A DNA stretch of 64,000 nucleotides from Hydrolagus colliei (lineage: Eukaryota): the NCBI GenBank assembly GCA_035084275.1, contig CM068778.1, forward strand, positions 1,054,001 to 1,118,000. The letters run 5' to 3'. The notes under the pieces are model-generated. The model was not told where the DNA came from and did not search any database. It saw only the letters and a program-made list of their open reading frames with translations. A program made the translations under genes and the position numbers. Shown piece by piece: positions 9,682-62,334 of the stretch (the first letter of the stretch is position 1; each line of letters starts with the position of its first letter).

Positions 9682-12178
9682 AGAATTTTACGGCACAAAA
9701 GGAGGCCATTCGGCCCATCTAGTCTGTGCCGGCTCTTTGAAAAGAGCGATTCAATCCCACTGCCCTGCCCGCTCCCCATAGCCTAATAGACCTGTTCTCC
9801 CTAAATAAAGATCTAATTCCCTTTTAAAAGTTGTTATCGAATCAGCCTCCACCACCTTTTCAGGCAATGCATTCCAGATTCGAACAACTCGCTGAGTGAA
9901 AAAATTTCTCCTCAGCTCCCCTCAACTTCACCTTGAAACTATTTTAAATCTGTGACCACGAGTCACAGAATCGCCCACGAGTGGAAATAGTTTTTCTCTA
10001 TTTGCCCTGTCGAAACCCCTCATGATCTTATAAACCTCTATTAGGTCTCCCCTCAATCTTCTCTGCTCCAGAGAGAATAACCCTAGCCTATCTAGCCTCT
10101 CCTCATAGCTGAAGTCCCTCAATCCTGGCACCATCCTAGTAAATCTTCGTTGTACCCTTTCCAATGCCTTCACATCCTTTCTGTAGTGTGGTGACCAGAA
10201 TTGAACACAGTATTCCAGCTGAGGCCTAACCAAAGTCTTATAGAGGTTTGTCAGCACTTCCTGACTTTTGTACTCTATACCCCTATTTATAAAGCCTAGT
10301 ATCTCATATGCCTTCTTAACAGCCTTGTCTACCTGTCCTGCCACCTTCAACGAGTCCCCAGGTCTCTCTGTTCATTCACACCATTTAAAATTGTACTATC
10401 TAGCCTATATTGCCTCCCTTCATTTCTTCTCCCAAAATGCATCACCTCACACTTCTCTGCATTAAACTTCATCTGCCATGTGTCTGCCCACTTTACCAAT
10501 TTGTCCATATCCTCTTGCAGATGGCTACTATCCTCCTCACTATTTACTATTCTCCCTAACTTAGTGTAATCTGCAAACTTGGAAACTGTACTCCGTACAC
10601 CCAAGTCCAGATCATTGATGTAGATTGCAAACAGCAATGGTCCCAAAACTGATCCCTGTGGCACACCACTGCTCACTTCCCTCCAGTCTGAAAAACAGCC
10701 GCTCACTACAACTCTCTGCTTTCTGTCTCGCAGCCAGTTGTGGATCCACGCTGCCACTGTCCCTTTTACGCCATGGGCCTTTAATTTCCTAATAAGTCTC
10801 TCATGTGGCACTTTGTCAAATGCCTTTTGAAAGTCCATGTAAACTACATCAACTGCGCTACCATTATCCACCCATTCCGTTACCTCATCAAAACATTCTA
10901 TCAGATTTGTAAGGCAAGATTTGCCTTTAACAAACCCATGTTGACTGTCCTTTATTAGCCTATATCTTTCTAAGTGAAGATCTACCTTGTCCCTGATTAT
11001 GGACTCTAGAAGTTTGCCCACTACCGACGTTAGACTGACTAGTCTGTAGTTACCAGGCTTGTCCTTCTGCCCCTTTTTGTACAAGGGAGTAACATTAGCT
11101 ATCCTCCAGTCCTCTGGCACGACCCCTGCGTCCAAGGAAGATTGAAAGATCGTGGCCAGAGTCCCTGCTATTTGCTCCCGTGCCTCCCTTAGTAACCTAG
11201 GGTGCATCCCATCCGGACCAGGTGACTTATCCACCTTGAGCGACGTCAACCTTTTTAGAACTTCCTCTCTGGTTATAATTATTCTATCCATTTCTCCTAC
11301 CCTCTCCTCCAATACCATGGCATTGGCTGTATCCTTTTCTTTTGTGAAGACAGAGGCGAAGTACTCATTCAGTACATCAGCCATGCCCTCTGCCTCCACC
11401 ATGAGATTTCCTCCTAGGTCCCTAATTGGCCCCACCCTATGCTTGATCAACCTTCTACTCTTAATATGTTGTTAAAAAACCTTAGGGTTCCCCTTAATCT
11501 TACTCGCTAATTGTTTTTCATGCAGTCTCTTTGACCCTCCAACTTCCTTTTAAGTTCTATCCTACACTTCCTATATTCTGCTTGGTTCCCTTCTGAATTT
11601 TGAGCCTGACACTTATCATAAGCCTCTTTTTTTTGTTTTATTTTGGCCCCGATTTCCTTAGTCATCCAGGGAGGTTTGGATGCCTTACATTTCACCTTTG
11701 TGGGGATGCTTTTGACCTATGCCTGAACTATCTCCTCTTTGAACGCTGCCCACTGCTCGTTAGTTGTCTTACCTGCCAATTTTTCTTTCCAATCCACCTT
11801 GGCTAGGTCCCACCTCAACTCATTGAAATTAGCTCTTTTCCAGTTGAGTGTCCTCACCTGTGATCGTTCCTTATCCCTTTCCATAATTATTCTGAATCTA
11901 ACGATATTGTGGTCACTATTCCCTAGATGCTCACCTACAGAAACCTGTTGAACTTGCCCTACCTCATTTCCCAAAACTAGATCCAGCAATGCTTCTTTCC
12001 TCGTTGGACTGGAAACATACTGATCAAGAAAGTTGTCCTGCACACACTTCATGAATTCTTCTCCCTCCTTGCCCTTTACTCTACTATTCTGCCAGTCTAT
12101 GTTGGGATAGTTGAAGTCACCCATTATCACTACTCTATTAGCTCTGCATTTCTCCGTGATACGCTGAATCAAAAATCG
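9682..12178 (-). mobile_element. CR1 LINE, 5'-truncated ORF2 (endonuclease and RT), frameshifted and internally deleted
   Basis: APE motifs MGDFNYPNIDW and SDH; RT motifs DFQKAFDKV, GVPQGSVLGP and FADYTK; C-terminal VRPQLEY; CR1 3' UTR. Confidence 0.95.
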
Positions 12179-17935: not shown

Positions 17936-20912
17936 TCATTGGCAGCCATTGACGTTGTCCATCAGGATGAGAGAGGGGTTTAGGAAACAGGGTTTACCGC
18001 TGAACTTGTTGATTGATCTGGTCTTGGGCTGGTCCATGGATTCGTGTCTGACCACACAGGAGTAGGTGTTCCCCTGCTCCCACTCGGAGCTCGAGATGGA
18101 CACCAGACTGTACATGGATTGTTTGAGTCCGGTCTCGTTTCCCATGACCTCCGTGTTGGAGTAGTTGCCCTCGCTAATGGCCCGGCCGTTGAAGGTCCAC
18201 TCCACCAGGATCTCCTCGGGGGCGAAGTCCTTCACCAAGCTCGTGAGGTTGACCGATTGGTGAGAGGAGAGCTCCTCGTCCAACAGGAGGAGGAGATACA
18301 CTGAAGGCTGTTCTGGGGAGACTGTGGGGAGAGTTGGCACTCGAATCAACGGCGGCAACAAAACGGACGATGCTCGTAGAGACACTTTCAAGTCAGGAGG
18401 ACGTCCCATGGCGACGGACAGTCACTGTGTCAGACCCGAGTGAGGGTAAGACGGGGGGTGGGGTGAGGGGGAGGGGAGGGAAGGGGGGAGATTGGGAGTT
18501 GCCGATGGGTGCATCGAAGAGGAGAGTCTTGAGGTGGGACTCGAAGGGAGGCCAGGGAGGGAGTGAGGGGGCGAGTGAGCGAGGTGGAGAGAATGTGGGA
18601 TGTGGGGAGGGAGGGAGGGAGGGAGGGAGGGAAGGGAGTGAGTGAAGGAGGGTGGGGGCGAGTGAGCGAGCGAGCGAGGTGGAGGGAATGTGGAATGTAG
18701 GGAGGGAGGGAAGGGAGGGAGGGAGGGAAGGGAGCGAGGGAGCGTGTGAGCGTGCGAGGGAGGGAGCGAGAGCAGATTGGGATAAGGAGTTCCAGTTGCC
18801 AATAAGCCAAATAAACCATTCGTTGGTCCTGAAAACCCCTGGCGTCCTTTGCTCACCTTCGCTCTTGGATATCTCTGCGCGCTTGGGAGAGGCCATGGTT
18901 GGGTGGCTGGCCTGGCAGGCGTATCACTTCCTACTGGCCCATTCTTCGGCGGGAATCTCCAACTCGGTGACCGCTCGCCGAGCCGAGCGACTCTCGTGCG
19001 CCGAATGTAAGGCCGTCTGTCCTCGAGTCCAACTCACGGCGACGTCGCTGGGGGCGTTGGTCACGACGCAGGTCAGGGTGATGGTGGCCTGCGTCAGCAG
19101 CTGCCTTGGTGAGGGCGGCAGCAGAGACACGCAGACTTCTGGCACGGCAGGCGGACAATCGGGAGGTCCTGCGGTTCGAATCCGGGCAGATCAGTTCAGG
19201 GTCCAGGGCAAGGCAGGGGGAGACCCTGGGCAAGTTTCCGTACGCTCCCCCCCAACACACGCATACACACACGTACGCACACACACGCAACACACACGTA
19301 GCACACACAACACACACAGTGTGAGTGTGTGGGGGGGCTGGGTGATTCTAATTGTGCGTGTGTGTGGGGGACTGGGTAATAACCCAGTCCCCCACAGTTA
19401 TTGTAATAACTCACAATAGTGAGTAGGTGTGTGTATGTGAGTGTGCATGTTTGTGTGAGTGTGTGTGTGAGTGTGCGTGTCTGCGTTTGTGAGTGTGTGT
19501 GTGCATGTGTGAGAGTGTGTGTTTGTGTATGTGTGAGAGTGTGTGTTTGTGAGTTTGTATGATTGCATGAGTGAGTTTGTGTGAGTGAGTGTGAGCGTGT
19601 GTGGGGACTGGTTTATTGTGAGTGTGTGTGCGTGTGTGTGTGAGTGTGAGTGTGTGTGAATGTGTGTGTGTGCGAGAGAGAACGAGTGCTCTGTACCACT
19701 GAGCTACAGGAGACCCCAACCCTACCTGGGCTCCAATTGGTGATGTTCTTGATGATGAGGGTCTGGGAGGGGTCATGGGTGACTTTGCAGGAATAAACCA
19801 CGTCTTTCGTCCAGTTTGTGGCCTGGATGGTCAGCCGGCTGTCAGTACGGAAGGTCCCATTGTCATTGAGCGAAGGGGAGCTCTTGAAGCCTGAGGCCAA
19901 GGCCTTCCCGTCCTTCAGCCGGTCAACCCTGAGCTTGTCCGGACTGAAGCCAGAGACTGAGCAGAGAAGGGTGGCCTGGTTGGCGAAGGCGAAGGCGATG
20001 TCTTCGGGGGACGTCTGCGTGAGGAGCACAACTGGGGGCGATGGCGACAACAACAAGGACAAAATTATACACGCACAGACAGGGGCTTTTGCGTCAGGAG
20101 GACGTCCCAAGGCGCGGACAGTCACTGTTTCAGAACGAAGCTGAGGACAATGTGATGGGGTAGGGGGGTGGGGGTGTGGGGTGTGGGGGGGGGGGGGTTG
20201 GGCTTCGAGGGTGGGGGAGGGGAGGGGGTGTGGAGTGGGGTGTGGGGGGGAGGGGGGTGGAGTGGGTGGTGGTTGGGGGAGATTAGGATTTGCCGATGGG
20301 CGCATCGAAGAGGAGGGTCTTGAGGCGAGACTTGAAGGAGGCCAGGGAGAGAGGGAGAGAGGCAGAGAGGGAGAGAGCGAGGCGGAGGGACTGGGGGATG
20401 GAGTTCCAGAGATTGGGGGGAGGTGGGCGGACGGATAGCGTAGCTGAAGGTTGGCCCATTTGGCTCACCGTCATAAGAGCATAAGCATTAGGAGCAGAAG
20501 TAGGCCATTCAGCCCTTCGAGCCTCGCGTGAAAGGCTCTACACAGGGGGTAATGTTGTTGTTGTTGTTGTCTCTGTACCTTTGGAAACACAAAACTAACC
20601 TGGGGTACAGATGTCGTCGCCTGACCAGCTACTGCTTTTGACTTGACAACAGAGATTGGAGATGTCCACCTGAGATGCCCGCATGGTCAGCTGGCTGCTG
20701 GCTGTGTAGAGACCGTCCTTGCTGAGCACCGGGGGGTAACTCCTGACTTGGCCTTCGTTGGCGATGGGACATCCATTGGAGGTGCAGCTGAAAGTCGCCG
20801 GCTCGGGGGAGTAGTCGGCGGCCAGACACCCGAACGTGAGTCGGCCGTCGGGGGTGGGGGTGCGATCCGCAGATGGACCGGAGGGCGTAAAGACTGGGAG
20901 CTCTAGGGGTGG
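17936..20912 (-). pseudogene. ighm: IgM-type constant region, unit A (CH1 20912-20600, CH2 20031-19726, CH3 19138-18857, CH4+sec 18321-17936)
   Basis: Phase-1 C1-set exons paralogous to unit B. Lesions: +4 nt frameshift and W>C in CH1, W>R in CH2, TGA at 18926-18924 in CH3, C>S in CH4. Confidence 0.92.
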
Positions 20913-22057
20913 CTGGAAACGCGGAGAGAGCAAAGTTAGACCCCCGCCCACCAGGTTTCCGCCGTTGTCCATTTGGGTCAGACGCCACAGATTCACTGGA
21001 CTAGACCTGCCGCACGCGTCAATACACACACAGGAGTAGGCCATTCAGCACCTCGAGCCCGCCCCGCAATTCAATAAGGTCACGGCGGATCTTGTAATCT
21101 AACTCCCCCCACCTTGTCCACATCTCCCCTTAATCCCTTCATACTCAAGAAATCTCATCAATCTCAGTCTTGAATATGTCCAGGGACTGACTGAGCATCT
21201 ACAGCCCTTTGGGGTAGAGAATTCCATCCATTCACTATCCTCTTGAGTGAAGATGTTTTTTTTCAACTCAGTGTGAAAAGGCTGACCCCTCGTCTTCAGA
21301 CTGTGACCCTCTAGTTATGGTTTCTCCAACCAGGGGAGACAGTCTCCCACTGTCTACTGTGTCAATGCCCCTTAATTATCTGATAGGTTTCTATAAGATC
21401 ACCTCTGATTCTTCTAACCAGGTCTCACACTCAATCACAGCCTGAACCCTGACATCTCAAACGCAAACTGTTTCCGTCCAATAACCCACAGTTTACTGAA
21501 CACACTCCTTCTCTCAGCCAGACGCTCTCTCTCCCTCTCTCTCTCTCTCCCTGTGTCCCTTTCTCTCGCTCTCGGTGACTGGCCAGCCAGCTCACACTCT
21601 GTCCTTCCACGTCACAACACGGAGCGTTCAATCTGCGTTTCGCCCACAAACGTACAGTCACTACACATGACAGTCTATTCTGTGAAGCGCTTTGAGACAC
21701 AGTCGATCGGATGTGAAAAGCCGCCACGTCTAACGCAAGGATTGTTCTCATTACTAACACCTGGATCTCTTATACAGAGTTTACGCTGTGTGTTCGATTG
21801 AAATCAGATCTGTGTGTGTTTTCTCCGCCGATCAGTTGGTGCGAAACAGGAACCAGATGATTGTAAAGCAGCAACGGCCTCTAGTGTCTACTGTGCGCTG
21901 TGAGGAAGCCTCACTCAATTGCCGTGAAAATCAAATTGAAATGAAATTCTGAGCTCCTGAAGCTCAGTGGTTAGAGACACTGACTCGCCTCGCAAGCGCA
22001 AGACCTGTGTTCGAATCCGGGTAGATCAGGTCAGGGCGTGACCTGGGGCCAAGTTTG

Positions 22058-26959: not shown

Positions 26960-27345
26960 TCATTGGCAGCCATTGACGTTGTCCAGCAGGACGAGAGACG
27001 GGTTTACGAAACAGGGTTTACCGCTGAACTTGTTGATTGATCTGGTCTTGGGCTGGTCCATGGATTCGTGTCTGACCACACAGGTGTAGGTGTTCCCCTG
27101 CTCCCACTCGGAGCTCGAGATGGACAACAGACTGTACATGGAGTGTTTGTGTCCGGTCTCGGTTCCCATGACCTCCGTGTTGGAGTAGTCGCCCTCGCTC
27201 ATGGCCTGGCCGTTGACCGTCCACTCCACCAGGATCTCCTTGGGGACGAAGTCCTTCACCAGGCACGTGAGGTTGACCGATTGGTGAGAGGAGAGCTCCT
27301 CGGCCAACAGGAGGAGGAGATACACTGAAGGCTGTTCTGGGGAGA
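26960..27345 (-). CDS. ighm: Unit B CH4 plus secretory tailpiece
   Basis: Open exon with both Cys and the Trp; tail GKPCFVNPSLVLLDNVNGCQ with a penultimate Cys. Confidence 0.92.
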
Positions 27346-27866
27346 CTGTGGGGAGAGTCGACACTCGAATCAACGGAGGCGACAAAACGGACAACGCTCG
27401 TAGAAACACTTTCACGTCAGGAGGACGTCCCATGGCGAGTGACAGTCACTGTGTCAGATCCGAGTGAGGGTAAGACGGGGGGTGGGGTAGGGTGAGGGGA
27501 GGGGAGGGATTGGTAGTTGCCGATGTGTGCATCGAAGAGGAGAACCTTGAGGTGGGACTCGAAGGGAGGCCAGGGAGGGAGGGGGCGAGTGAGCGAGGTG
27601 GAGGGAATGTGGGATGTGGGGAGGGAGGGAGGGAAGGAGGGAGGGGAATGAGTGAGGGAGGGAGGGGGCGAGTGAGCGAGCGAGCGAGGTGGAGGGAATG
27701 TGAGATGTAGGGAGGAAGGGAAGGGAGGGAGGGAGGGAAGGGAGCGAGGGAGCGTGGGAACGTGCGAGGGAGGGAGCGAGAGCAGGTTGGGATAAGGAGT
27801 TGCAGTTGTTAATAAGCCAAAGAAACCATTCGTTGGTCCCGAAAACCCCTGGCGTCCTTTGCTCAC

Positions 27867-28148
27867 CTTCGATCTTAGATATCTCTGCGCGCTTGGGAGA
27901 GGCCATAGTTGGGTGGCTGGCCTGGCAGGCGTATCTCTTCCTACTGGCCCAGTCTTGGGCGGGAATCTCCAACTCGCTGACCGCTCGCCGAGCCGAGCGA
28001 CTCTCTTGCGCCGAATGTAAGGCCGTCTGTCCTCGAGTCCAACTCACGGTGACGTCGCTGGGGGCGTTGGTTACGACGCAGGTCAGGGTGACGGTGGCCT
28101 GCGTCAGCAGCTGCCTCGGTGAGGGCGGCAGCAGAGACACGCAGACTT
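27867..28148 (-). CDS. ighm: Unit B CH3 exon (94 codons)
   Basis: Open, phase 1-1; TLTC..SW..YAC motifs. Confidence 0.9.
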
Positions 28149-28698
28149 CTGGCACGGCAGGCGGACAATCGGGAGGTCCTGCAGTTCGAATCCGGGCAGA
28201 TCAGGTCAGGGTCCAGGGCAAGGCAGGGCAGGGGGAGACCCTGGGTAAGTTTCGGTAATCTTCCCCCTCAACACACACACACACACGTACGCACACAAAC
28301 ACACGTACGCACACACACGCAACACACACGTAGCACACACAACACACAGTGTGAGTGTGTGTCTGGGGGGGGGGGCTTGGTGATTCTAATTGCGCGTGTG
28401 TGTGGGGGACTGGGTTATTGTGAGTAGGTGTGTGTGTATGTGAGTGTGCATGTGTGTGTGTGTGAGTGTGCATGTGTGCCTTTGTGAGTGTGTATGTGTG
28501 CATGTGTGAGAGTGTGTTTGTGTGTGCGTGTGCATGTGTGAGAGTGTGTGTTTGTGTGCATGAGTGAGTTTGTCTGAGTTAGTGTGAGTGTGTGTGGGGA
28601 CTGGGTTATTGTGAGTGTGTGTGTGAGTGTGTGTGTGTGTGTGTGCTAGAGAGAGCGAGTGCTCCGTAGCACTGAGCTACAGGAGACCCCAACCCTAC

Positions 28699-29643
28699 CT
28701 GGGCTCCAATTGGTGATGTTTATGATGATGAGTGTCTGGGAGGGATCATGGGTGACTTTGCAGGCATAAACCACGTCTTTCGACCAGTCTGTGGCCGGGA
28801 TGGTCAGTCTGCTGTCAGTACTGAAGGTCCCATTGTCATTGAGCGAAGGGGAGGTCTCAATGCCTGAGGCCAAGGCCTTCCCGTCCTTCAGCCAGTCAAC
28901 CCTGAGCTTGTCCAGACTGAAGCCAGAGACTGAGCAGAGAAGGGTGGCCTGGTTGGCGAAGGCGATGTCTTCAACAACAACAAATAAACAACAAATTACA
29001 TTTATAGAGTGCCTTTCAAGACGGGAGGACGTCCCAAGGCGCTGCACGGGAGGTGTGTGACCCGAGCTGGGAGCGGAATGTTTGGGAAGGGGTGAAACAC
29101 GAAGGGGAGGTAAAAGAGTTCGGGGTGGAACAGAAGGCACGATCGAAGAGGAAAGTCTTCAAACCGGCCTTGAAAGAGGAAAAGGAAGAGACTAAACGGA
29201 GGGATTGAGGGATTGCATTCCAAAGGGTGGGGGCGGAGAAACTGAAAACCCGGCCTCCGATGGTGGGGCGGTTCGGGCGGGGGGCTTGGAGCAGGCCAAG
29301 TCCTGATGAACGGAGGGTCCGGGTGGGCGTGTAGGGGGAGAGTAGATCGGTTACGTAGGGTGGGGCAAGGCCGTGTAAAGCCTTGTAGGTGAGGACGAGG
29401 ATCTTGAACTCGATCATCTGGAGGATGGGGAGCCAGTGGAGACGGGCGAGGGTGGGGGTTATGTGGTCGCGGAGGCGGGTGCGGGATAGTACACGGGCTG
29501 CAGAGTTTTGGATGGCCTGCAGCCTGTGAATGGAAGAACTCGGGAGGGCGACGAGGAGAGAATTTCCATAGTCCAGCCGTGAGGTGATGTATGCGTGCAC
29601 AAGTGTTTCGGCAGCGCGGGGGACGTCTGTGTGATGAGCACAA
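28699..29643 (-). pseudogene. ighm: Unit B CH2 exon split by an L2 insertion (29643-29618 and 28972-28699)
   Basis: The two halves are contiguous in unit A (20031-19726); read-through into the insert stops at 29459. Confidence 0.92.
28973..29617 (-). mobile_element. 5'-truncated L2 (about 645 bp) inside the CH2 exon, same sense as the Ig gene
   Basis: Open L2 RT C-terminal peptide (ORF 29016-29684) and a (TTG)n tail; no clear TSD. Confidence 0.92.
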
Positions 29644-53335: not shown

Positions 53336-54181
53336 TAGGGTTCGGCAATATATCGATATATCGGTTATATCCGACATAAGTTTCATATCGATACACTGAT
53401 ATAAGCATTTTCTAAATATCAATATACGAAAAAGTCAATATATCGAAAAATTCGGAATGCGCGCGCACTGAACTACAAGACCCAGAATGCTCATCTCTAT
53501 ACACAATGCACAGACCGAGATACAAGCCGACATATTGTATTCATAGTCCTCGAATACAATATACAGGTATGCAAGGGGTGGGGGGGGAGAGAGACAGCGG
53601 GGGGCGGGTGGGGGGGTGAGAGAGGGACGGCGTTGGGGGGGGTGAGGAGAGAGGGATGGCGGCGGAGGGGGGGGGAGAGCGATGGCGGCGTGGGGGGGTA
53701 GAGGGGTACGGCGGCTGGGGGGGGGGAAGAGAAGGATGGCGGCGGGGGTGGGAGGAGAGAGGGACGGCAGCTGGTGTGGGGGAGAGAGGGACAGGGACAG
53801 CGGGGGTACGACAGACGGGTGTGGGGAGACAGGGTGGATGTGACAATATACAGGCAGGCAGGGAGGCAGGCCGGGGGAGGGAGGGAGGGAGGGAGGGCGG
53901 GGGGGAGAGAGAGAGAGGGAGGGAGAGAGAGAGAGAGAGGGAGAGAGAGAGACAGAAAAACACAGAGATGGAGAGAGTGAGTGTGAGAGACACAGAGAGA
54001 GAGATATTTACCTCCGGAGGAGATAGCCCCGAATGCACGTGCACTTCCGAATGTGCGCGCACCTCGCAACGCACGCGCATGCGCAGTACTAAAACCCCCG
54101 AAAATATGGATATATCGGTATATCTTGATATGAGCCGATCGATATATCTAAATAGGAAAATTTCCATATCGACGGACCCTA
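53336..54181. mobile_element. Non-autonomous hAT-type DNA transposon (846 bp); truncated second copy at about 62890-63261
   Basis: Imperfect TIRs TAGGGTTCGGCAATAT / TAGGGTCCGTCGATAT; perfect 8-bp TSD GTCCTACG at 53328-53335 and 54182-54189; subterminal ATCGAT-rich repeats. Confidence 0.88.
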
Positions 54182-55280
54182 GTCCTACGGCATTCACATG
54201 ATGTTCACGTGAACCTTCAGTAGTTAGTCCCTATCACTGACAATGCACAAATATTGTAGAAAACAAATATAAATCTTTATTCATTCAGATTAGTAATATT
54301 ACTGGTGATTAAAATCATACACTAAATCTTATTTGTCCCTGTTCGGTTCTCTCAGTGGTTACATTGACCAAACCAATGTTACAGAAGAGATGGAGAAGTC
54401 ACTTCCAATTTAATATCAAATAACATGTACCGGTACGCGTTCGAGTAGCAAAAGCATAATCAGGTACTGCAATAATGTTGCTTAGTTTGCTAGTGTCAAT
54501 ACACATGTTGACAGTCATATTTCTAGAGCGTCTTTCACATAGGGAGGACGTCTGATAAGTCGTATATGTCTTAATTTTGAACTTCTTACACCTTCTCCCA
54601 CACCTTTTTTCTCTCTCAACTCCAAATCGGGTGGTGAGATATCACTGGGGAGTGATGTGCAGTGTCCTGGAGAGATGAGCGTCGCTGTTTAAATGTAATT
54701 ACAATTTTATTGCTAATTAAACGTCTAAAAGCCCGTCATAAACTGTCAGAACAATAATCCATTCACATTGAGTACCCAATGTTTTGTTTGGTTACAATGG
54801 GACACTTTGTCAATGGTGAATAGGGTACAGTACAATATTCAGTATTTTCAATTCAAATTCACCAGATTGATTGGGCTTCAGAATTGCATACATGAGAAGC
54901 AACAGCACACTAAACGAGCAAGCTGCCTCCATATTGAGGCTCAATTTAAGTTGTCTCTTTCAATTACAAAATTGAACTATGTAATTTCAGGCTTTCAAGC
55001 AATACACGGAATTAAAAAAAGTTATTGATACAATGCAGCAGTCATTTCACTCCATTCTGATCCTACAGTTAGAGGAAGTTGCTGGAGATGACTTAAGCTG
55101 CACTGACCATCCAAACACAATCATGGCCATCTGGCCTTGTTGAACTTGTCAAGAGAATGGGCGTTGAATGAGCTATAGTAGAATTGGTCACTGTTTCCCC
55201 AAGCCCTGAAATATAGTTTTATTAGCTCCATCGCTATTGCAGGTGCTGAGCAAAGCCATGTCCATGTTTCCCTTGCTTTG

Positions 55281-58200
55281 TTAGGCCCACAGTTGTTGGT
55301 TGTGTTGCTTGCTTTTGTCTGGTAACAGATCCTGGTTGCTAGCGACTTTGGTTAATAACTCTGCCTGTTTCTTGACTTGACTCAATGATTGAATGCGGTC
55401 CTGGTACCCAGGTTTTACTTCTTGTTTCTCCCCTTCAATCAGCCAATCAATGTACTCCGGAGTCGACAGTGGATTTGGTCTGAGAGCTATTTCTTTAAGC
55501 CGTGTCAGGCAGAGAGATAATGTTTCCACCAGCCTTAGAACCTTTTTCTGGATGAGAAACAGATCCTCTTCTAGTTTCTGCATTATCTTCTCTTGGGTCA
55601 TCATTTCACCACTCGACTTCTCATACTTTTCTTTCAGATTCTTATACGTTCTCTTTTCTATAGTTTCAACATATTCAAATTTGTAATGTTGATTGTGATG
55701 AACACTCCAAATACATTTGCCAGGACAGACCATGCAGTATCCACTCTTGTCCATAGCTGCACAGTCATGTTTGTCACCATCATTAGGGATAAAACAGGGA
55801 TGGTGGCAGGTGATGTGACACTGCTGACAATTAGTTATGTAATCTCTAGTACCACTGATATCCTTCTTTACTGCTTTTGTCACCTTAATTTCATATTCAA
55901 AGTTTTCATTTGCCTTCACTTCAGCTTTGTGCTGGTTCAACACTTGTTTTGTCTTCCTAATCTCTTCTAGTTTGCACAGACCCACATTGATCTGCGGTTG
56001 CAATCCCTCCACAGTAACGTCCAGCTGATTTCGCTCCTTAAGAACCTCCTTGGTTAAACATAGACTCTTTGATTTAATTGTGCTAAGAGAGCTAAAGAAG
56101 TTCCTCATGCTGGATGATCCCATTCTCCAGAACATTTTGTCAAAGTTCTCCTCATCACTTCCACACTTCCCCGAGGTTCCACTTTGAGCGAATATGGCTG
56201 AGTTATTGAATTTGAAGTGAAGTGGTTGACCTTTATTATCTTTGGGACATGGTATCTCAGATTCGTTCACCGCCTCAAGAACAGGAGGAACCTGCCCATC
56301 TGCGAAGGTGACCAAAACGCGAATGTTCTCTGCAATATCTTTGCCAAAAATTGAAAGAATTGAATCAAAGATGTATTTCTGTGTCGGAGTCAGTCGGGCT
56401 AAAGAGGCTTGGACAACAAAGCAAACAACATCAATTTGATCTATACCATGTGGGGAAGTAAAGAACTCTCTGATTTGCTTTGTAATATTTTTGTCTCTTG
56501 TTATTCCTTGGGTGTCTCCATATCCTGGGGTATCTATAATATTCAGTGAGTAACAAACTCTGTATCCTTCTTGGTGGCTGAATTCATAGGCACTGATTGA
56601 AGAGGTTTGGCTTTCAGCCTGTGATCTATTTGTCTCTTCATGTATTAACTTGTATCGGAACTTGTCCTCCCACTCTACTCCGAGGATGTAGTTGACCATG
56701 GCGTTAATGAGGGTGGTTTTTCCTGAGCCTGTCGCTCCAAGGACCATGATGGTCTTGACATTGTGTATGGGGGATTCCTTTCCAAACCTGTATTTTACAG
56801 GGTCGCCATTATTCTCACATCTCAATCTCTTCACAAGGAGCTGGTAAATTGCAGGGTCCCCTTTGGTCAACAATTTGCTTTCCATGACATAACGTCCAGC
56901 CAGTAATTTTGGATTTTTCTCTGTGTTTGTTTTCTTTGGTGCGTATGTTGTTGTTTTTGATTCTTCTTTCTTTTCCTTACTCTCTATCTTTAGTGAGGCC
57001 TCATGACTCAATGAACTCTCACCAGCCTGACCACAGACTGCAGATACTACCAGCATGTAAGTTGCACTGGGTATCAATCCTCGTAATATATAAAAACATT
57101 TACTGTCCTTTGTTGTTGTTTCCTGCCATCGGTCACCCTCCGCACTTGAGGTGTTCCTACGTACTTGGTATTGTATCTTGTAGTGATGTATAGTCACACC
57201 ATCTCCCACCACACTGGGCTTCTCCCAGGTCACTTTCACATCAAACCCTTCTACCTGAGCCATTGAGAGCTTTCCAGGGGCATTCGTGGGAAGTGTGGTC
57301 ACTCTCAGACTATCACTGGCCAGGCTGACCCATGGGTTACTCACTGTTCTGTATTGTAACTGATACTCTTTGTATGGACTTAACCCAGTTATGGTGCAAG
57401 GGTTTGATATCCCACTTATGGTCTGAATGTCCCAGGTTTCCTGTTTGGCCATACGAAATTCCAATCTGAAGCCCACAATCTGACCATTTTGGTCTGCTGG
57501 CCGTAAATTCAGGCTGACACTGTCATGGGATCTACTAAACACTGAGGGAGTGACAGGTTTTACTGGGGGTTTGAAGCAGCTGCTCACCAAGGTTGCATCT
57601 TCATACAGGTAAATTGATGCTCCTGTATGGTCCTGATCCGGCACAGAGGCAACAAGGAAACTTGTGCTCGCATCTGCTCTGTTGGCCGCGTAAAATTCCA
57701 CGAAAGATTGTGCACATTTCCGCATTTCCTGGAGCAAGTGATGGCATGATTTCTGGCCAGGATTGGCTGATGTTGGCTGATATGCTTTACCAGGGCTTTG
57801 AGATCGAAGGTAATTGTCTATTTGTGACAGATAGGTGTCTTCTTGATCCAGTGATGTGAATGTGAAGCAGACGAGGTACTGCGTGTTTAGGTCAAATATT
57901 TGTGTTTCCAGCTCAACCTGTGATTTCGCCAAATTTATGCCTTTCATTTTATTGAGGCAAGCTGCCACCAAAGACATTTCCAGGTGTTTGTTGTCCAGCC
58001 ATTCCGTCAGTAACTGGCTTCCCAGTGGAGATTGTTCTGTATTGATCAGAATATCTGCCAGGATTCCCTCCTCTGCACCCCCTCCCCGGATAGATGGCAG
58101 GGCACTGGCCAACCTCTTTTGGAAGGCATGCCTGTGCTGCAAACATCTCGCTCTGAATCTTTGGAGGTTTAGTTTGATCGCAGGAAATGGGACATTGGGA

Positions 58201-60537
58201 CATTCTTTGATCATATCACTGCACCGCATGTCCACCTCATCGAGGAACTCCAGGATAGCCTGTGAGCGACTGATCAGATTGACACCGATGCATCGTACAA
58301 GCTGTGCTGCTTTTCCGTTCAGCTTCTTGAGTGGATAGAGCCAGACTTTCATGGGCACTGCATGTTCCCCATTCTCTCCCAGACCTTGTGGGAGACTTTT
58401 GTAAATGTCGATGGCATCTAGAAAGCTGGTGGGATTAGACTGAAGGGAATAATCACCATAAAAGGTGCAGCCAAACATCTGGACATTAGCTTTTTCTTCT
58501 TTTGACAGGTCCAGGGAAACGTCACCCACAATTCCAAACTTGGGGATATTGTTAATCTTTGCTTCCATGTGACCCTGAATATCTCTTAGATTCTCTGAAG
58601 ACGAGACCTCACGATCAAAAACAAAAAAGGCATGAGCCCCGAACAGCAGAGCAGTCACTACGTGGGTGGCCATGCCCTGCTCAAACACTTCAGGGTAAGA
58701 AATGTTCTGTTCTGCCAAGTGGCTCATGGTCAGCTGCTCAAACCTGGTTGTGGTGGAATACTGCAGTGTCACTCGAGCATGTTGCTGGGATTTCTTTTTG
58801 TCATTCAGATACTTCCCAGATCCTTCTACCTCAATCATTCCTCCCATGAGGCTGGCCTTCAGATCTCCTGACACATTCAGGGCAGAGGATTTGTCATCAA
58901 TGGAGTCTGACACAATGACCTGAAACTCTGTGTTGGGTTTAGGAGTCACGTCCCTGTTAGCTCTCAGTGTTTCTAAGTCCCACAGCGTGACTCCTGCACA
59001 AGCCAAAGATACATGTTTTAAAATAGACAACACATTTGAGCCTCAATCAGTTGGAGCAAAATCTCAATTCTGAAACTCAAGTTTGTGGGTTCTAATCCCG
59101 AATCACGGATTTGGTACAAACACAATGTAGCGGACAATGCAGTTCACTGAGGAGCACTATATCGGGGAGCACCCATCCAACCATTCCAGAAAACCTACCC
59201 ATGTGAGGCGTGGGCTCTATCCATTGAGCTACAGGACTACAATTTACAAGGCTAGGGCTCTAATCACTGAACTGCAAAACTGGTTTGCGAGGTGAGGGCT
59301 GTAATTGCTGAGCTACAGGACTGTGGCTCGCGAGGCTAGGGCTGTAACCACTGAGTAACAGGACTGTTGCTTGGGAGGCAAGGGCTATAACCACTGAGCG
59401 ATAGGATTCCTTGGACATATTTCCAGGGATGAGAAGATAAAATTAACAGAAATGATTGGAGAGATGAGAACTTTTTGCTTTTCATTTGAGATTCAGAGGA
59501 ATATTCCAGATCTCACTGCTACCACTCCACTCCTGCCACTTCCTTCCCCATCATCATGTCGTGCCCAACGACCTTGCTATACAACTATGCTGAAGGTCAT
59601 CATCCACCAGCTCAAAGACATGCTGCACCAGGTCAGGACCCGAGCATGGGAGAGGGGCAGGGTAGATGGGAGGACTGGGAGTGAGTTGGGAGTGGAGGGA
59701 GAGAGTGGGGAATACAGCAGAAGTCAAGGTCGAAGAGGAGGTTCTTAAAGGAGGTGAGGGAGGGAGCAAGGCAAAAGGACTGTGGGATGGAGTTCCAGAG
59801 TGTGGGGGCAGAGAGACTGAAAGCCTGCTCGCTGATGGTAGCAGGTGAGAGACATGAAGGAGGCTGAACAGAGCTGAACTGGGGGGTGCAGGAAGGTTTA
59901 TAGGGGGACAGCAGGTTGGAGAGATAGGACTGGGGGGGGGGGGGGGGGCAAGATTGTGAATGGCCTTGAAGCTGAGTATGAGGATATTAAATTCAATTCT
60001 GTGGGGGATTGGGAGCCAAAGGAGCTGGGTGAGGATGGGTGTTTTGTAGTCATGGAGCTTGGTGCGGGAGAGGATACAAGCTGCAGAGTTATGGATCTTC
60101 TGCACCTTGTGAAGGGAAGAACCAGGAAGGCCAATTATGAGGAGGGAGTTTGCATAGTTGAGCCTTCATGTGCTGAATGGGTTTCGGCAGCATGAGGGAT
60201 GAGGCAGTGGTGTAGTCTAGCGATTTTGCGAAGGTGGTCATGGTGCACATTTGGGGGAGGAAGGACAGTTCAGGATCAAACAAGATGCCCATGTTTATCT
60301 CTGTGTCTGACCCCCGATGGCGATTTCCAGTTTAATTCCTTTGGCCTAATATTGTACACAACCCAAATTTTGCCAGCCATCAGCTGAGCAGAGCAGATCA
60401 ATGCCTGACTAAACACCAATGCTGTTGTTTTGTTTACCTGGGATAATGCTGTCTGTTCGACAGTCGTACAACATTCCCAGCTTGAAAGAACGTCCCAGAC
60501 TTGCCAGAGTCTTGGTTTCATTGTTTTCATTACCCAT
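55281..60537 (-). CDS. Stonustoxin/verrucotoxin-like pore-forming protein fused to 2xFN3 and a P-loop GTPase; exons 60537-60438 and 58993-55281, about 1270 aa, intact
   Basis: Exon 1 LASLGRSFKLGMLYDCRTDSIIP joins G-VTLWD through a phase-1 GT-AG intron, resembling the SNTX N-terminus. GATGSGKT at 56738-56715, DTPG at 56534-56523, AATAAA at 55223-55218. An in-frame ATG at 60597 is an alternative start. Confidence 0.88.
59530..60295 (-). mobile_element. Degenerate L2 in the toxin-gene intron
   Basis: QKIHNSAACILSRTKL..IEFNILILSFKA peptide. Confidence 0.8.
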
Positions 60538-60659: not shown

Positions 60660-62020
60660 TCAGAAATACCCTGAAATTCCCTTCCCACTGTACATACTCC
60701 CAGGTTAGGGTTAGATACACAGTAAAATCTCCCTCTACACTGTGCATTCTTCCGTCCACACTCCCAGGTCAGGGTTGGAAACACTATAAAGTTCCCATTA
60801 CACTGTTCGTCCCTCCATCCACATTCCCAATTCAGGGATAGAGTCACAGTAAAGTTCGCTTTGCACCTGTGCGTCTGTCCATCCACAATCCCAGGTCAGG
60901 ATTAGAGACACAGCTCCTTCTACATTGTGTGTCCATGCATCCAAACTCCCACTTTAGGGTTAGCGTCACACTGAAGCTCCCATTACACTGTGCATCCATC
61001 CATACACACTCCCAGGTCAGTGCTAGAGACACAACAAAGCTTCTATACTAAAAGTACATCTGCCACACTCCCAATTCAGGGTTGGAGACACAGTAAAGCG
61101 CCCTCTGCACTGTGTATCCATCCACCATCCCATTTTCATGGTAGGTACACAGTAAAACTCCCTCTACACTGTGCATCCATCCATCCAATCTACCAGGTCA
61201 GGGTTACCGTCCCCATAAAGCTCTCTCTATATAAGGTGCATCCATCCATCCATACTCACAGTCCAGGGTTAGAGACACAGTAAAACTGCCATTACACTGT
61301 ATTCGTCTGTCCATACTCCAAATTCAGGGTTCGAGACACAATAAAGCTCGCTCTACACTCTGTTGGAATGTAGCCGTTTTGTGTGTGACTCTGTAACAAC
61401 AGGCTTGTGCTTTAGACTAGTTTAGACCAGATCAGAAGCTTGTGGCCAGATAACTTTAATTGGCTGTAGGCTGAGATAACATAGTGGAGAAATACTAGCA
61501 CGAGATAGAAGTTACGTGCGGTCCACGCTGATTGGACAAGGCAATTATATCATGCACTGTGCTGTCTTAACTGATTGGGTCCTGTAGGACAAAGAAAGCG
61601 AACCGAGTATATAAGTTGGCTGTTTCGTTTGTAAACTCTCTCTCTGGTCGACCTACCAAGCATTGTGCCTGTACTATAACTGGGATGTAGTACTGAATAA
61701 ACATCATAAAACTCCATGGTGACTGAAGAGCGTTTCATTGAGAAAACACCACGAACACCCATTTCTTCCGAATCTAACACACTCCCAGTTCAGGGTTACA
61801 GATACAGTGCAGGTCATTCTACACTGTGTGTCTATGCATCCACAATCCCAGGCAAGGATGAGAGACACAGTAACATTCCTTCTGCACTGTGAATGTGTCT
61901 GTCCACACTCCCATTTCAGGGTTAGAGACACAGTAATGCTCCCTCTACACTGTGCATCTGTCCATACTCCTAGGCCAGGGTTAGAGACACAAACAAGCTC
62001 CCACTACACTGTATATCTGT
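60660..62020. repeat. Minisatellite with a unit of about 59 bp, interrupted by a solo LTR
   Basis: Tandem units like ctacactgtgcatccatccacactcccaggtcagggttagagacacagtaaaactccct. Confidence 0.9.
61361..61779 (+). mobile_element. Solo LTR (419 bp)
   Basis: TGTTGG...CTAACA termini; 5-bp TSD CACTC (61356-61360, 61780-61784); three ATTGG, TATATAA at 61608, AATAAA at 61696. Confidence 0.85.
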
Positions 62021-62334
62021 GTACACTAGATCAGGACAGCAAAAGAAAAGCAGAGGAGACAAGCCTTACTTATGTTCGATCATCCAAAACCCACCAGATT
62101 CTTTGTCTTTGTGTGTATCCGATATAAAGGGCACTGTATAAATGCAATTTTGTTGTTATTGTTGTATCTGGGAGCTTAGCACTGAGTGAATTCCCAATAA
62201 GGGTAGTTAGAGGAAATCAGATACTTTCCGTTGGGCTCAGACTTTCCTCAATGCTGTAGAGTATCGGAGATCGAGGGAAGAGAGTTTCTATCCATCCGTT
62301 TCCTGGCCGATAATTATCCAGATCAAAATATTTA

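What the first reader, a model, noticed from the sequence alone, without database searches (positions are those of the whole stretch)
55281..60537. Pore-forming toxin domain fused to FN3 repeats and a GTPase: candidate nucleotide-gated lytic immune effector
Seen: one intact ORF with an SNTX-like N-terminal region, two FN3-like repeats, G1 GATGSGKT, G3 DTPG, a TFAD G4-like motif and a coiled-coil tail. Known: stonustoxin is MACPF/CDC-FAT-thioredoxin-PRYSPRY. Here PRYSPRY is absent and a septin/AIG1-like GTPase module follows instead. No signal peptide is evident. Inference: a cytosolic protein in which GTP-driven oligomerisation controls pore formation, combining GBP/GIMAP-like sensing with a perforin-like effector. 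Similar fusions may already exist as uncharacterised fish proteins, so the novelty would be functional.
Basis: partly seen in the sequence, partly recalled or inferred. Interest (0 to 1): 0.8.

Follow-up and report, generated by a model that had tools for sequence, protein, structure and literature searches.

The report
Stonefish-toxin-like pore former fused to GTPase
This is an intact two-exon gene of a chimaera-like fish whose protein joins a stonefish-toxin-type pore-forming head to a septin/GIMAP-like GTPase; the fusion is conserved from sharks to birds but has never been studied, and it hints that such "toxin" heads began as nucleotide-controlled immune weapons inside cells.

Summary
A minus-strand gene (exon 1 60537-60438, GT-AG intron, exon 2 58993-55281) encodes 1270 aa with no stop. 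Its domains, in order:
- an SNTX-type MACPF/CDC head, a FAT-like helical domain and a thioredoxin-like domain (PDB 4wvm_A, E 3.7e-90)
- two FN3 domains
- a G domain with G1/G3/G4 motifs that are near-invariant in 77 of 77 same-architecture relatives
- a helical tail

PRY/SPRY is absent.

The G domain belongs to the septin/Toc34/GIMAP superfamily but is a full member of none of those families. The tail has no Pfam family and no PDB fold match.

The fusion is not unique to this window. It is annotated, uncharacterised or misnamed "stonustoxin", in chimaera, sharks, rays, ray-finned fishes, turtles, crocodilians, lizards and ostrich. Two papers passed over such long genes without naming the GTPase.

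Related heads carry other tails: PRY/SPRY, an IRG-type GTPase and, marginally, ApoL. dN/dS against the Callorhinchus counterpart is 0.37, and lowest in the G domain and MACPF.

GTP-driven assembly gating pore formation is a reasonable inference but is untested.

The parts
60438..60537 (-). Exon 1: start codon (60537) and the first 33 codons plus one base; N-terminus of the MACPF/CDC-like head
   Evidence: tblastn of relatives' residues 1-34; sequence read; same exon in C. milii
58994..60437 (-). Intron (1444 nt), GT..AG, phase 1; holds an interspersed repeat (about 59631-60295)
   Evidence: intron position shared with C. milii L001; repeat matches
55281..58993 (-). Exon 2: rest of the CDS through the stop codon (55281-55283), with no further intron
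58257..60537 (-). MACPF/CDC-like pore-forming domain, SNTX type (aa 1-279; the span includes the intron)
   Evidence: 4wvm_A/B alignment E 3.7e-90 / 1.1e-86; Pfam MACPF_SNTX 24.4 bits, below cutoff; dN/dS 0.25
57972..58256 (-). Stonustoxin helical (FAT-like) domain, aa 280-374
   Evidence: Pfam PF21109 96 bits
57567..57941 (-). Thioredoxin-like SNTX domain, aa 385-509; no CxxC pair in the sequence
   Evidence: Pfam PF18078 113 bits; sequence
57288..57566 (-). FN3 domain 1, aa 510-602
   Evidence: Pfam fn3/FN3_DSCAM; PDB FN3 tandem alignments
57000..57281 (-). FN3 domain 2, aa 605-698
   Evidence: Pfam fn3
56913..56999 (-). Lys/Glu-rich linker, aa 699-727; lies within the least conserved segment measured
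   Evidence: 46% identity and dN/dS 0.73 for the segment aa 701-775 against C. milii; low pLDDT at the start of the model
56187..56912 (-). Small beta subdomain plus G domain, aa 728-969, of the septin/Toc34/GIMAP superfamily
   Evidence: Pfam Septin/AIG1; Foldseek GIMAP7, GIMAP2, Toc34, septin-2; profile and sequence against PDB; dN/dS 0.21 for the segment aa 776-975
56715..56738 (-). G1 / P-loop GATGSGKT, aa 786-793
   Evidence: G786, T788, G789, G791, K792 in 77/77 fused relatives
56523..56534 (-). G3 DTPG, aa 854-857
   Evidence: D, P, G in 77/77; T in 76/77
56298..56309 (-). G4-like TFAD, aa 929-932
   Evidence: F, D in 77/77; T in 76/77; aligns with the equivalent stretch of Toc34
55932..56159 (-). 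Long helical stalk, aa 979-1054
   Evidence: AF2 helices 260-286 and 293-335 in fragment numbering
55647..55898 (-). Beta-rich Cys/His module, aa 1066-1149 (C1089, C1092, C1096, H1097, C1100, C1111, C1120, C1123, C1127, H1132); probable metal-binding site
   Evidence: Invariant in 76-77/77 fused and 44-48/49 headless relatives; pLDDT about 85-95; no Pfam family, no PDB fold match
55341..55646 (-). C-terminal helical bundle, aa 1150-1251; the last ~19 aa are modelled at low confidence (pLDDT below 50)
54852..55000 (-). Block 3' of the stop that is conserved with the C. milii locus (73% identity); probable 3' UTR
   Evidence: blastn L001 18556-18700; AATAAA/ATTAAA candidates start 58 and 570 nt after the stop

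Best explanation
SHOWN. This is an intact gene under purifying selection. Its protein is a single chain with these parts in order:
- an SNTX-type MACPF/CDC pore-forming head, a FAT-like domain and a thioredoxin-like domain
- two FN3 domains
- a G domain of the septin/Toc34/GIMAP superfamily with intact nucleotide-binding motifs
- a helical stalk
- an invariant Cys/His module
- a helical bundle
There is no signal peptide and no TM segment.

INFERRED. The protein acts inside the cell as a cell-autonomous immune effector.
- GTPases of this superfamily are switched by nucleotide-dependent dimerisation or oligomerisation across their G interfaces. This is established for septins, Toc33/34 and GIMAP2/7.
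- MACPF/CDC pores need many heads brought side by side into a prepore.
- So GTP-dependent self-assembly of the C-terminal module most likely sets the local concentration and register of the heads, and thereby licenses pore formation on a target membrane.
- The FN3 pair and the Cys/His tail would supply spacing and target or partner recognition, the job PRY/SPRY is thought to do in stonustoxin.

Which membrane is attacked is not decided by the evidence. Candidates are a pathogen vacuole, a cytosolic microbe or the host cell's own membrane.

The anatomy is about 95% certain. The confidence given here (0.4) is for the mechanism.
For: - Gene model and intactness.
- Head homology to stonustoxin over about 490 residues.
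- Domains.
- G-domain fold closest to GIMAP7, GIMAP2 and Toc34 (Foldseek E 5e-8 to 2e-7), then septin-2. Septins are best by profile. Toc34 aligns across G1-G4.
- G1/G3/G4 conserved in 73-77 of 77 fused relatives and Cys/His ligands in 76-77 of 77.
- dN/dS 0.37 overall against the C. milii counterpart, 0.21 in the G domain and 0.25 in MACPF. Both ends are constrained together.
- The architecture is kept across jawed vertebrates, 77 of 212 fetched proteins.
- Sister architectures join the same head to PRY/SPRY, to an IRG-type interferon-inducible GTPase (P0202, IIGP E 6e-69) and, marginally, to ApoL (P0162).
- No signal peptide or TM segment.
- Circumstantial: SNTX-like transcripts rose in immune tissue of vaccinated Arctic charr (PMC6369366). 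Others have argued for an immune role of SNTX-like proteins in non-venomous fish (PMC12107551). Two Ig heavy-chain-like constant-exon clusters lie 26-38 kb away in this window.
Against: - No expression, localisation, nucleotide-binding or membrane data exist for this gene or any family member that I could find.
- Stonustoxin also lacks a signal peptide yet acts outside the cell, so absence of one does not prove a cytosolic site of action.
- G-domain matches to every characterised family are partial or marginal, so dimerisation behaviour is extrapolated at superfamily level.
- FN3 domains are commoner in extracellular proteins.
- The NJ tree of heads groups them by taxon rather than by tail type. 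The head-tail pairing may therefore be evolutionarily fluid rather than a co-adapted machine.
Confidence: 0.4

Rival explanations
1. Released defensive cytolysin. Like stonustoxin, the protein leaves the cell without a signal peptide (holocrine release or cell rupture) and acts on foreign membranes outside. The GTPase/tail then serves only for intracellular storage, auto-inhibition or packing, or as an inert binding module.
For: The head is a close homologue of a venom cytolysin that has no signal peptide. FN3 domains are typical of extracellular proteins, and the FN3 hits include receptor phosphatases and fibronectin. 'Stonustoxin' was detected in the sturgeon ovarian-fluid and egg proteomes, architecture not stated (PMC11077782).
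Against: Nucleotide-binding motifs are conserved in 73-77 of 77 relatives, and the G domain has the lowest dN/dS. That is hard to explain if the module worked only where GTP is scarce. An invariant Cys/His cluster suits a reducing compartment (inference). The top FN3 match is intracellular titin. Sister fusions carry cytosolic immune modules: IRG GTPase and PRY/SPRY.
Confidence: 0.2
2. Non-lytic membrane or scaffold protein. The MACPF head is used for membrane binding, remodelling or signalling rather than for lysis, as in the non-lytic MACPF proteins astrotactins, BRINPs and Torso-like (established knowledge). The septin-like GTPase builds a filament or scaffold.
For: Septins give the best sequence-profile matches to the G domain. 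MACPF_SNTX scores below its Pfam cutoff. No lytic activity is known for any SNTX-like protein of a non-venomous species; PMC10566576 states these probably are not active toxins.
Against: The head is far closer to a proven cytolysin (306 bits over 486 residues) than to any non-lytic MACPF. No non-lytic MACPF protein appeared among the PDB sequence hits. The septin match covers only profile positions 6-77 of 280, with no septin-specific C-terminal element. The family shows copy-number expansion and tail swapping, which is typical of immune genes.
Confidence: 0.12
3. Not a real single gene: a pseudogene, a read-through of two neighbouring genes, or an assembly chimera.
For: Several database relatives are clearly concatenated or truncated gene models: doubled heads, and lengths of 1700-2000 aa.
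Against: Head, FN3, G domain and tail lie in one uninterrupted exon with no stop. The same two-exon layout and split codon occur in C. milii. There are 77 same-order relatives in many orders of vertebrates. dN/dS is 0.37. No N run lies in the gene.
Confidence: 0.03

Closest known systems
Stonustoxin alpha/beta (SNTX; PDB 4wvm) and SNTX-like proteins (neoverrucotoxin, verrucotoxin)
   Same: MACPF/CDC-like head, FAT-like helical domain and thioredoxin-like domain, co-linear from the N-terminus (E 3.7e-90). No signal peptide. A short first coding exon followed by a long second exon.
   Different: PRY/SPRY is replaced by two FN3 domains, a G domain and a Cys/His-bearing helical tail. Exon 2 runs on to the stop instead of splicing to a third exon; the same was seen but not interpreted for four 'longer sntx-like' genes in the stonefish genome (PMC10566576). 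There is no evidence of an alpha/beta pair or of venom use.
GIMAP2 / GIMAP7 (AIG1 family immune GTPases)
   Same: Best structural matches to the modelled G domain (Foldseek E 5.5e-8 and 7.2e-8). Pfam AIG1 scores above its cutoff. They belong to the class of GTPases that act through nucleotide-dependent dimers or oligomers (established knowledge).
   Different: The Pfam match covers only profile positions 2-127 of 212. There are no phmmer hits to GIMAP chains. This protein has a 300-residue tail with a Cys/His module and is fused to a pore-forming head.
Septins
   Same: Best sequence-profile hits for the G domain (E about 1e-6). Pfam Septin scores above its cutoff. G1 and G3 context aligns with Cdc11.
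   Different: Only the first quarter or so of the septin profile matches. The septin-specific C-terminal element of the G domain is not matched.
Toc34 / Toc33 chloroplast import GTPases
   Same: The sequence alignment spans G1 to G4 and beyond. Foldseek E 1.7e-7.
   Different: These are plant organelle receptors with a TM anchor. E-values are marginal (about 5e-4). The relation is at superfamily level only.
SNTX head + 2 FN3 + IIGP/IRG GTPase of turtles (P0202, P0207), and head + FN3 + PRY/SPRY (P0175)
   Same: Same head and same FN3 pair, with a different immune-type module in the same position. This shows the head is a cassette that takes alternative C-terminal modules.
   Different: The GTPase there is of the dynamin-like IRG family, unrelated in sequence to the one here. 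These proteins are likewise uncharacterised.
Two-part cell-autonomous systems: GBP or IRG coats that deliver membrane-damaging effectors (for example GBP1 with APOL3), perforin-2/MPEG1, gasdermins
   Same: Works-like comparison only, from established knowledge: an immune GTPase assembly marks a membrane and a lytic protein breaches it.
   Different: Those are separate polypeptides of unrelated families. Here sensor-like and effector-like parts are one chain. Nothing here tests this analogy.

Membership tests
SNTX-like branch of the MACPF/CDC superfamily | N-terminal MACPF/CDC-like domain homologous to stonustoxin | tested here: met
   phmmer 4wvm_A E 3.7e-90 and 4wvm_B E 1.1e-86, co-linear. 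By Pfam PF24674 alone it would be inconclusive (24.4 bits against a cutoff of 27).
SNTX-like branch of the MACPF/CDC superfamily | Stonustoxin helical (FAT-like) domain | tested here: met
   PF21109 96.1 bits, profile positions 2-96 of 96
SNTX-like branch of the MACPF/CDC superfamily | Thioredoxin-like SNTX domain | tested here: met
   PF18078 113 bits, profile positions 1-126 of 126
SNTX-like branch of the MACPF/CDC superfamily | C-terminal PRY/SPRY (B30.2) domain of canonical SNTX | tested here: not met
   No PRY or SPRY Pfam hit. tblastn with PRY/SPRY-bearing relatives finds no such exon in the window.
SNTX-like branch of the MACPF/CDC superfamily | Pore formation or haemolysis; alpha/beta heterodimer | not testable with these tools
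   Needs protein-level data.
Unnamed metazoan 'septin-like G domain + Cys/His helical tail' family | G1/G3/G4 motifs together with a C-terminal tail carrying 8 invariant Cys and 2 His | tested here: met
   Alignments A1/A2. Column shares 76-77/77 and 44-48/49 for the Cys/His positions. 2179 clusters at 50% identity match the tail at E<=1e-3, and 625 at E<=1e-30.
Septins | Full septin G domain including the septin-specific C-terminal element | tested here: not met
   Pfam Septin matches profile positions 6-77 of 280 only. PDB septin alignments stop after G3.
Septins | G1, G3 and G4 nucleotide-binding motifs | tested here: met
GIMAP / AIG1 | AIG1 domain over its full length | tested here: inconclusive
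   PF04548 35.5 bits (cutoff 27) but profile positions 2-127 of 212 only. Foldseek's best hits are GIMAP7 and GIMAP2, with TM 0.48-0.59 normalised to the target. No phmmer hit to GIMAP chains.
GIMAP / AIG1 | Family-specific conserved box between G3 and G4 | not tested
   I had no tool-derived reference for it. A recollection from memory was not used (see the slip paragraph in the full report).
Toc34/Toc159 | G domain alignable through G1-G4, and plastid outer-membrane context | tested here: inconclusive
   The alignment spans G1-G4 at E about 5e-4. An animal protein cannot share the plastid context, so the relation is at superfamily level only.
IRG / GBP dynamin-like immune GTPases | IIGP or GBP domain | tested here: not met
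   No PF05049 or PF02263 hit at E<=0.1. A sister architecture in turtles does carry IIGP.

The most novel reading that the evidence does not exclude
Jawed vertebrates other than mammals keep an unstudied class of single-chain, nucleotide-gated pore formers. A perforin-like SNTX head is armed by self-assembly of a septin/GIMAP-like GTPase, or in sister genes by an IRG GTPase or a PRY/SPRY sensor, to breach pathogen-containing or host membranes from the cytosol. Stonefish venom toxins would then be a late, externalised offshoot of this ancient cell-autonomous immune system.
Probability: 0.3. Interest if true: 0.85.

Novelty: new variant of a known kind. Interest (0 to 1): 0.6.

Why it matters
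What the many SNTX-like proteins of non-venomous vertebrates do is an open question. The finding bears on it in three ways.

1. One large, conserved subfamily has a GTPase of the immune/septin superfamily in place of the PRY/SPRY domain. Sister genes carry an IRG GTPase, PRY/SPRY and, marginally, ApoL. This points to an intracellular immune role and gives a concrete hypothesis that structure can check: nucleotide state controls the spacing of the heads.

2. It exposes two database gaps. The roughly 300-residue Cys/His tail is shared by more than 2000 sequence clusters but has no Pfam family and no solved fold. Many of these genes are also mislabelled as 'stonustoxin subunit alpha', which has already fed into comparative studies that treated them as plain toxins (PMC12107551, PMC10566576).

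3. If the mechanism holds, it would be a one-chain counterpart of the GTPase-plus-lytic-effector pairs known from mammalian cell-autonomous immunity.

Tried and rejected
1. Tail model against PDB by Foldseek: nothing significant (best E 1.1). Pfam finds nothing in the tail apart from one weak sub-threshold match that I read as spurious, Csm2_III-A (E 0.07, 14.3 bits against a cutoff of 24.8).
2. Literature: six searches combining stonustoxin/SNTX-like/MACPF with GTPase, AIG1, GIMAP, septin, fibronectin or interferon found no description of the fusion. The neoVTX multi-omics paper does not mention these domains. The key structural paper, Ellisdon et al. 2015 (PMC4687532), is not held. I therefore could not map the membrane-inserting helix clusters or the alpha/beta interface residues onto this protein.
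3. An alternative 3' PRY/SPRY exon in the window: none.
4. Pseudogene, read-through or chimera reading: rejected.
5. Species identification: not achieved.
   - No identical protein in the 5.8-billion-protein set.
   - The best relative is Callorhinchus milii LOC103171780, at 67% aa and 76-78% nt identity and dS 0.58. The interspersed repeats and the upstream 63-bp array are shared.
   - The source is therefore probably a holocephalan or a diverged paralogous locus.
   - The GPCR ORF was unsuitable for an exact look-up because its N-terminus is missing.
6. The head itself was not modelled.
7. The NJ tree of heads is a quick distance tree. It includes isoforms and imperfect gene models, so it is indicative only.

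Full report
**1. The observation**

The minus strand has a stop-free frame of 1250 codons at 55281-59033.
- tblastn with four relatives (chimaera, shark, alligator, tuna) aligns their residues from about 34 onward starting at 58994. It aligns their first 33-34 residues to 60537-60436.
- The DNA shows an ATG at 60537, 33 codons plus one base, a GT donor at 60437-60436, a pyrimidine-rich run, and an AG acceptor at 58995-58994.
- Joining the two exons as they stand gives 3813 nt, 1270 aa and one terminal stop.
- No N run touches the gene.

**2. Domains**

Pfam gives the following:

| Family | Score | Note |
|---|---|---|
| Stonustoxin_helical | 96 bits | |
| Thioredoxin_11 | 113 bits | |
| fn3 | E 7.7e-17 | two stretches |
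| Septin | 36.6 bits | above cutoff, profile positions 6-77 of 280 only |
| AIG1 | 35.5 bits | above cutoff, profile positions 2-127 of 212 only |
| MACPF_SNTX | 24.4 bits | just under its cutoff of 27 |
| PRY or SPRY | none | |

- Against PDB sequences, the head matches stonustoxin alpha and beta (4wvm) at E 3.7e-90 and 1.1e-86. The single co-linear alignment covers toxin residues 29-516.
- At that level of similarity the same fold is a safe inference. I did not model the head.
- The N-terminus is co-linear with the 703-residue toxin chain. Hydropathy shows neither a signal peptide nor a TM segment.
- So 'no signal peptide' is true, but it does not distinguish this protein from stonustoxin.

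**3. The GTPase and tail**

I aligned residues 720-1270 with 39 relatives (A1) and modelled them (pLDDT 80, pTM 0.77).

G domain:
- Foldseek against PDB puts GIMAP7, GIMAP2 and Toc34 first (E 5.5e-8 to 1.7e-7), with septin-2 at 1.2e-5. Only the G domain of about 260 columns aligns.
- A profile search of PDB sequences puts septins first for the G domain (E about 1e-6).
- The G domain alone reaches Cdc11, Toc34 and Toc33 only at E about 5e-4. The Toc34 alignment runs from G1 through the TFAD stretch.
- The domain is thus a member of the septin/Toc34/AIG1 superfamily but of none of its characterised families.

Tail:
- Modelled alone (A2, pLDDT 79), it is a long helical stalk, a beta-rich module and a helical bundle.
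- It has no significant PDB match (best E 1.1) and no Pfam family apart from one weak sub-threshold match that I read as spurious (Csm2_III-A, E 0.07).
- The beta-rich module carries eight Cys and two His that are invariant or nearly so. It is probably a metal-binding site.

**4. Relatives**

The same order of domains occurs in proteins of about 1250-1330 aa from the following:
- Callorhinchus
- many sharks and rays
- sturgeon, paddlefish, gar, bichir and teleosts
- turtles, alligators, lizards and ostrich

All are 'uncharacterized protein' or carry toxin names such as 'Stonustoxin subunit alpha' or 'STXB'.

- By my own domain census, 77 of the 212 proteins fetched have head-FN3-G-tail.
- The G domain plus tail also occurs without the head, often with a second G domain or with FN3 repeats. 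Examples come from a coral (Montipora), amphibians and many unnamed eukaryotic sequences.
- The tail alone matches 2179 clusters at 50% identity (E<=1e-3), of which 625 are at E<=1e-30.

The head in turn occurs with other tails:
- PRY/SPRY, the canonical form of about 700 aa, also present in Callorhinchus
- two FN3 only
- two FN3 plus PRY/SPRY (turtles)
- two FN3 plus an IRG-type interferon-inducible GTPase (turtle P0202, IIGP E 6e-69)
- FN3 plus a marginal ApoL match (catshark P0162, 25.9 bits, at cutoff)

A quick NJ tree of heads groups them by taxon more than by tail type. This suggests repeated exchange among paralogues. The tree includes isoforms and imperfect models, so it is only indicative.

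**5. Constraint**

The C. milii locus of the best relative (P0012; L001) compares as follows:
- It has the same two exons and the same phase-1 split codon.
- CDS identity is 76-78%.
- It shares a conserved block 3' of the stop and a 63-bp tandem array upstream of exon 1.

Nei-Gojobori dN/dS by segment, with dS 0.58 overall:

| Segment | dN/dS |
|---|---|
| Whole CDS | 0.37 |
| G domain | 0.21 |
| MACPF | 0.25 |
| FAT-like | 0.31 |
| Cys module | 0.36 |
| C-terminal tail | 0.44 |
| Stalk | 0.47 |
| FN3 pair | 0.49 |
| Thioredoxin-like | 0.52 |
| Linker | 0.73 |

- In the 77 fused relatives, the key residues G786, T788, G789, G791, K792, D854, P856, G857, F930 and D932 are each present in 77 of 77.
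- The remaining motif positions range from 63 to 76 of 77.
- The Cys/His positions are present in 76-77 of 77.
- Both the pore-forming end and the nucleotide-binding end are therefore kept working.

**6. How it most likely works**

Shown: the anatomy, its intactness, its conservation, and the absence of secretion or membrane-anchor signals.

Established knowledge:
- GTPases of the septin/Toc/GIMAP class act through nucleotide-dependent dimers or oligomers.
- MACPF/CDC proteins must assemble side by side into a prepore before inserting.
- The stonustoxin heterodimer resembles such an early assembly. PMC10566576 summarises this.

Inference:
- GTP-dependent self-assembly of the C-terminal module sets the proximity and register of the heads, and so licenses pore formation.
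- The FN3 pair and the Cys/His tail take the recognition role that PRY/SPRY has in the canonical protein.
- The sister fusion to an IRG GTPase is the strongest indirect support for an intracellular immune setting.

I put the mechanism at about 0.4. The target membrane is open.

Rivals:
- A cytolysin released without a signal peptide, 0.2.
- A non-lytic scaffold role, 0.12.
- An artefact, 0.03.

**7. What is known**

The literature I could search does not describe this fusion.
- The stonefish genome paper noted four 'longer' sntx-like genes that lack the third exon and have an extended second exon. It did not name the extra domains (PMC10566576).
- A survey of gene transfer among teleosts lists a 'stonustoxin subunit alpha' orthogroup with a 3804-bp alignment, the size of this CDS (PMC12107551).

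The gene is thus a member of a database-visible but undescribed variant of the SNTX-like family. I rate it a new variant of a known kind. The novelty lies in function and in the unrecognised tail module.

- None of these letters entered a tool call, a script or a conclusion.
- The membership row that would have needed them is marked not tested.

**9. Limits**

- The species was not identified.
- The head was not modelled.
- There are no expression or protein data.
- The Ellisdon et al. 2015 paper was not available.

Noticed in passing
window 17936-21044 (-) and 26960-29140 (-): There are two sets of three ORFs with Ig C1-set domains: 20595-21044, 19613-20305 and 17936-18409; and 28646-29140, 27454-28155 and 26960-27433. 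For the two ORFs searched against PDB (19613-20305 and 27454-28155), the best matches are immunoglobulin heavy-chain constant regions. They lie in GC-rich, G-skewed stretches. This looks like two Ig heavy-chain constant clusters about 9 kb apart, as in the cluster-type loci of cartilaginous fishes, 26-38 kb from the finding.
   Followed up: partly
window 60698-61300 and 61818-62027: A tandem array with a unit of about 63 bp starts 160 bp upstream of the start codon. Similar repeats lie upstream of the Callorhinchus milii counterpart (L001 7087-7794 and 9661-9781). Whether it has a role, for example in regulation, is unknown.
   Followed up: partly
window 5965-6930 (-): ORF with a rhodopsin-family 7TM domain (Pfam 7tm_1, E 2.9e-17). 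The open frame begins inside the receptor, so the N-terminus is missing or lies elsewhere.
   Followed up: partly
window 10347-11450 (-): ORF with a reverse-transcriptase domain (RVT_1, E 7.5e-34); a retroelement. It was not examined further.
   Followed up: no
window 59631-60295 (intron of the gene): An interspersed repeat carrying a 183-aa ORF with no Pfam hit. Copies of it and of several other repeat families are shared with the C. milii locus at about 65-80% identity.
   Followed up: partly
window 53580-53808: G-rich tandem repeats (units of 55-109 bp) about 1.5 kb 3' of the stop codon. Overlapping ORFs on both strands there have no Pfam hit.
   Followed up: no
window 39699-39965 and 40401-40671: Long imperfect (CA)n and (GT)n arrays lie in the stretch that also holds four of the five N runs (37835, 38952, 39552, 41193). 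The N runs were left as they are.
   Followed up: no
relatives P0202, P0207 (turtles) and P0162 (catshark): SNTX heads are fused to an IRG-type interferon-inducible GTPase (IIGP, E 6e-69 for P0202, the one I re-scanned) and, marginally, to an ApoL-like region (25.9 bits, at cutoff). These are further undescribed pairings of a pore-former with an immune module.
   Followed up: partly
relative P0145 (Callorhinchus, 1159 aa): This protein is annotated with PRY/SPRY, yet it aligns to the window through the G domain (residues 31-983 against 58994-56061). It is either a head-FN3-G-SPRY hybrid or a merged gene model.
   Followed up: no
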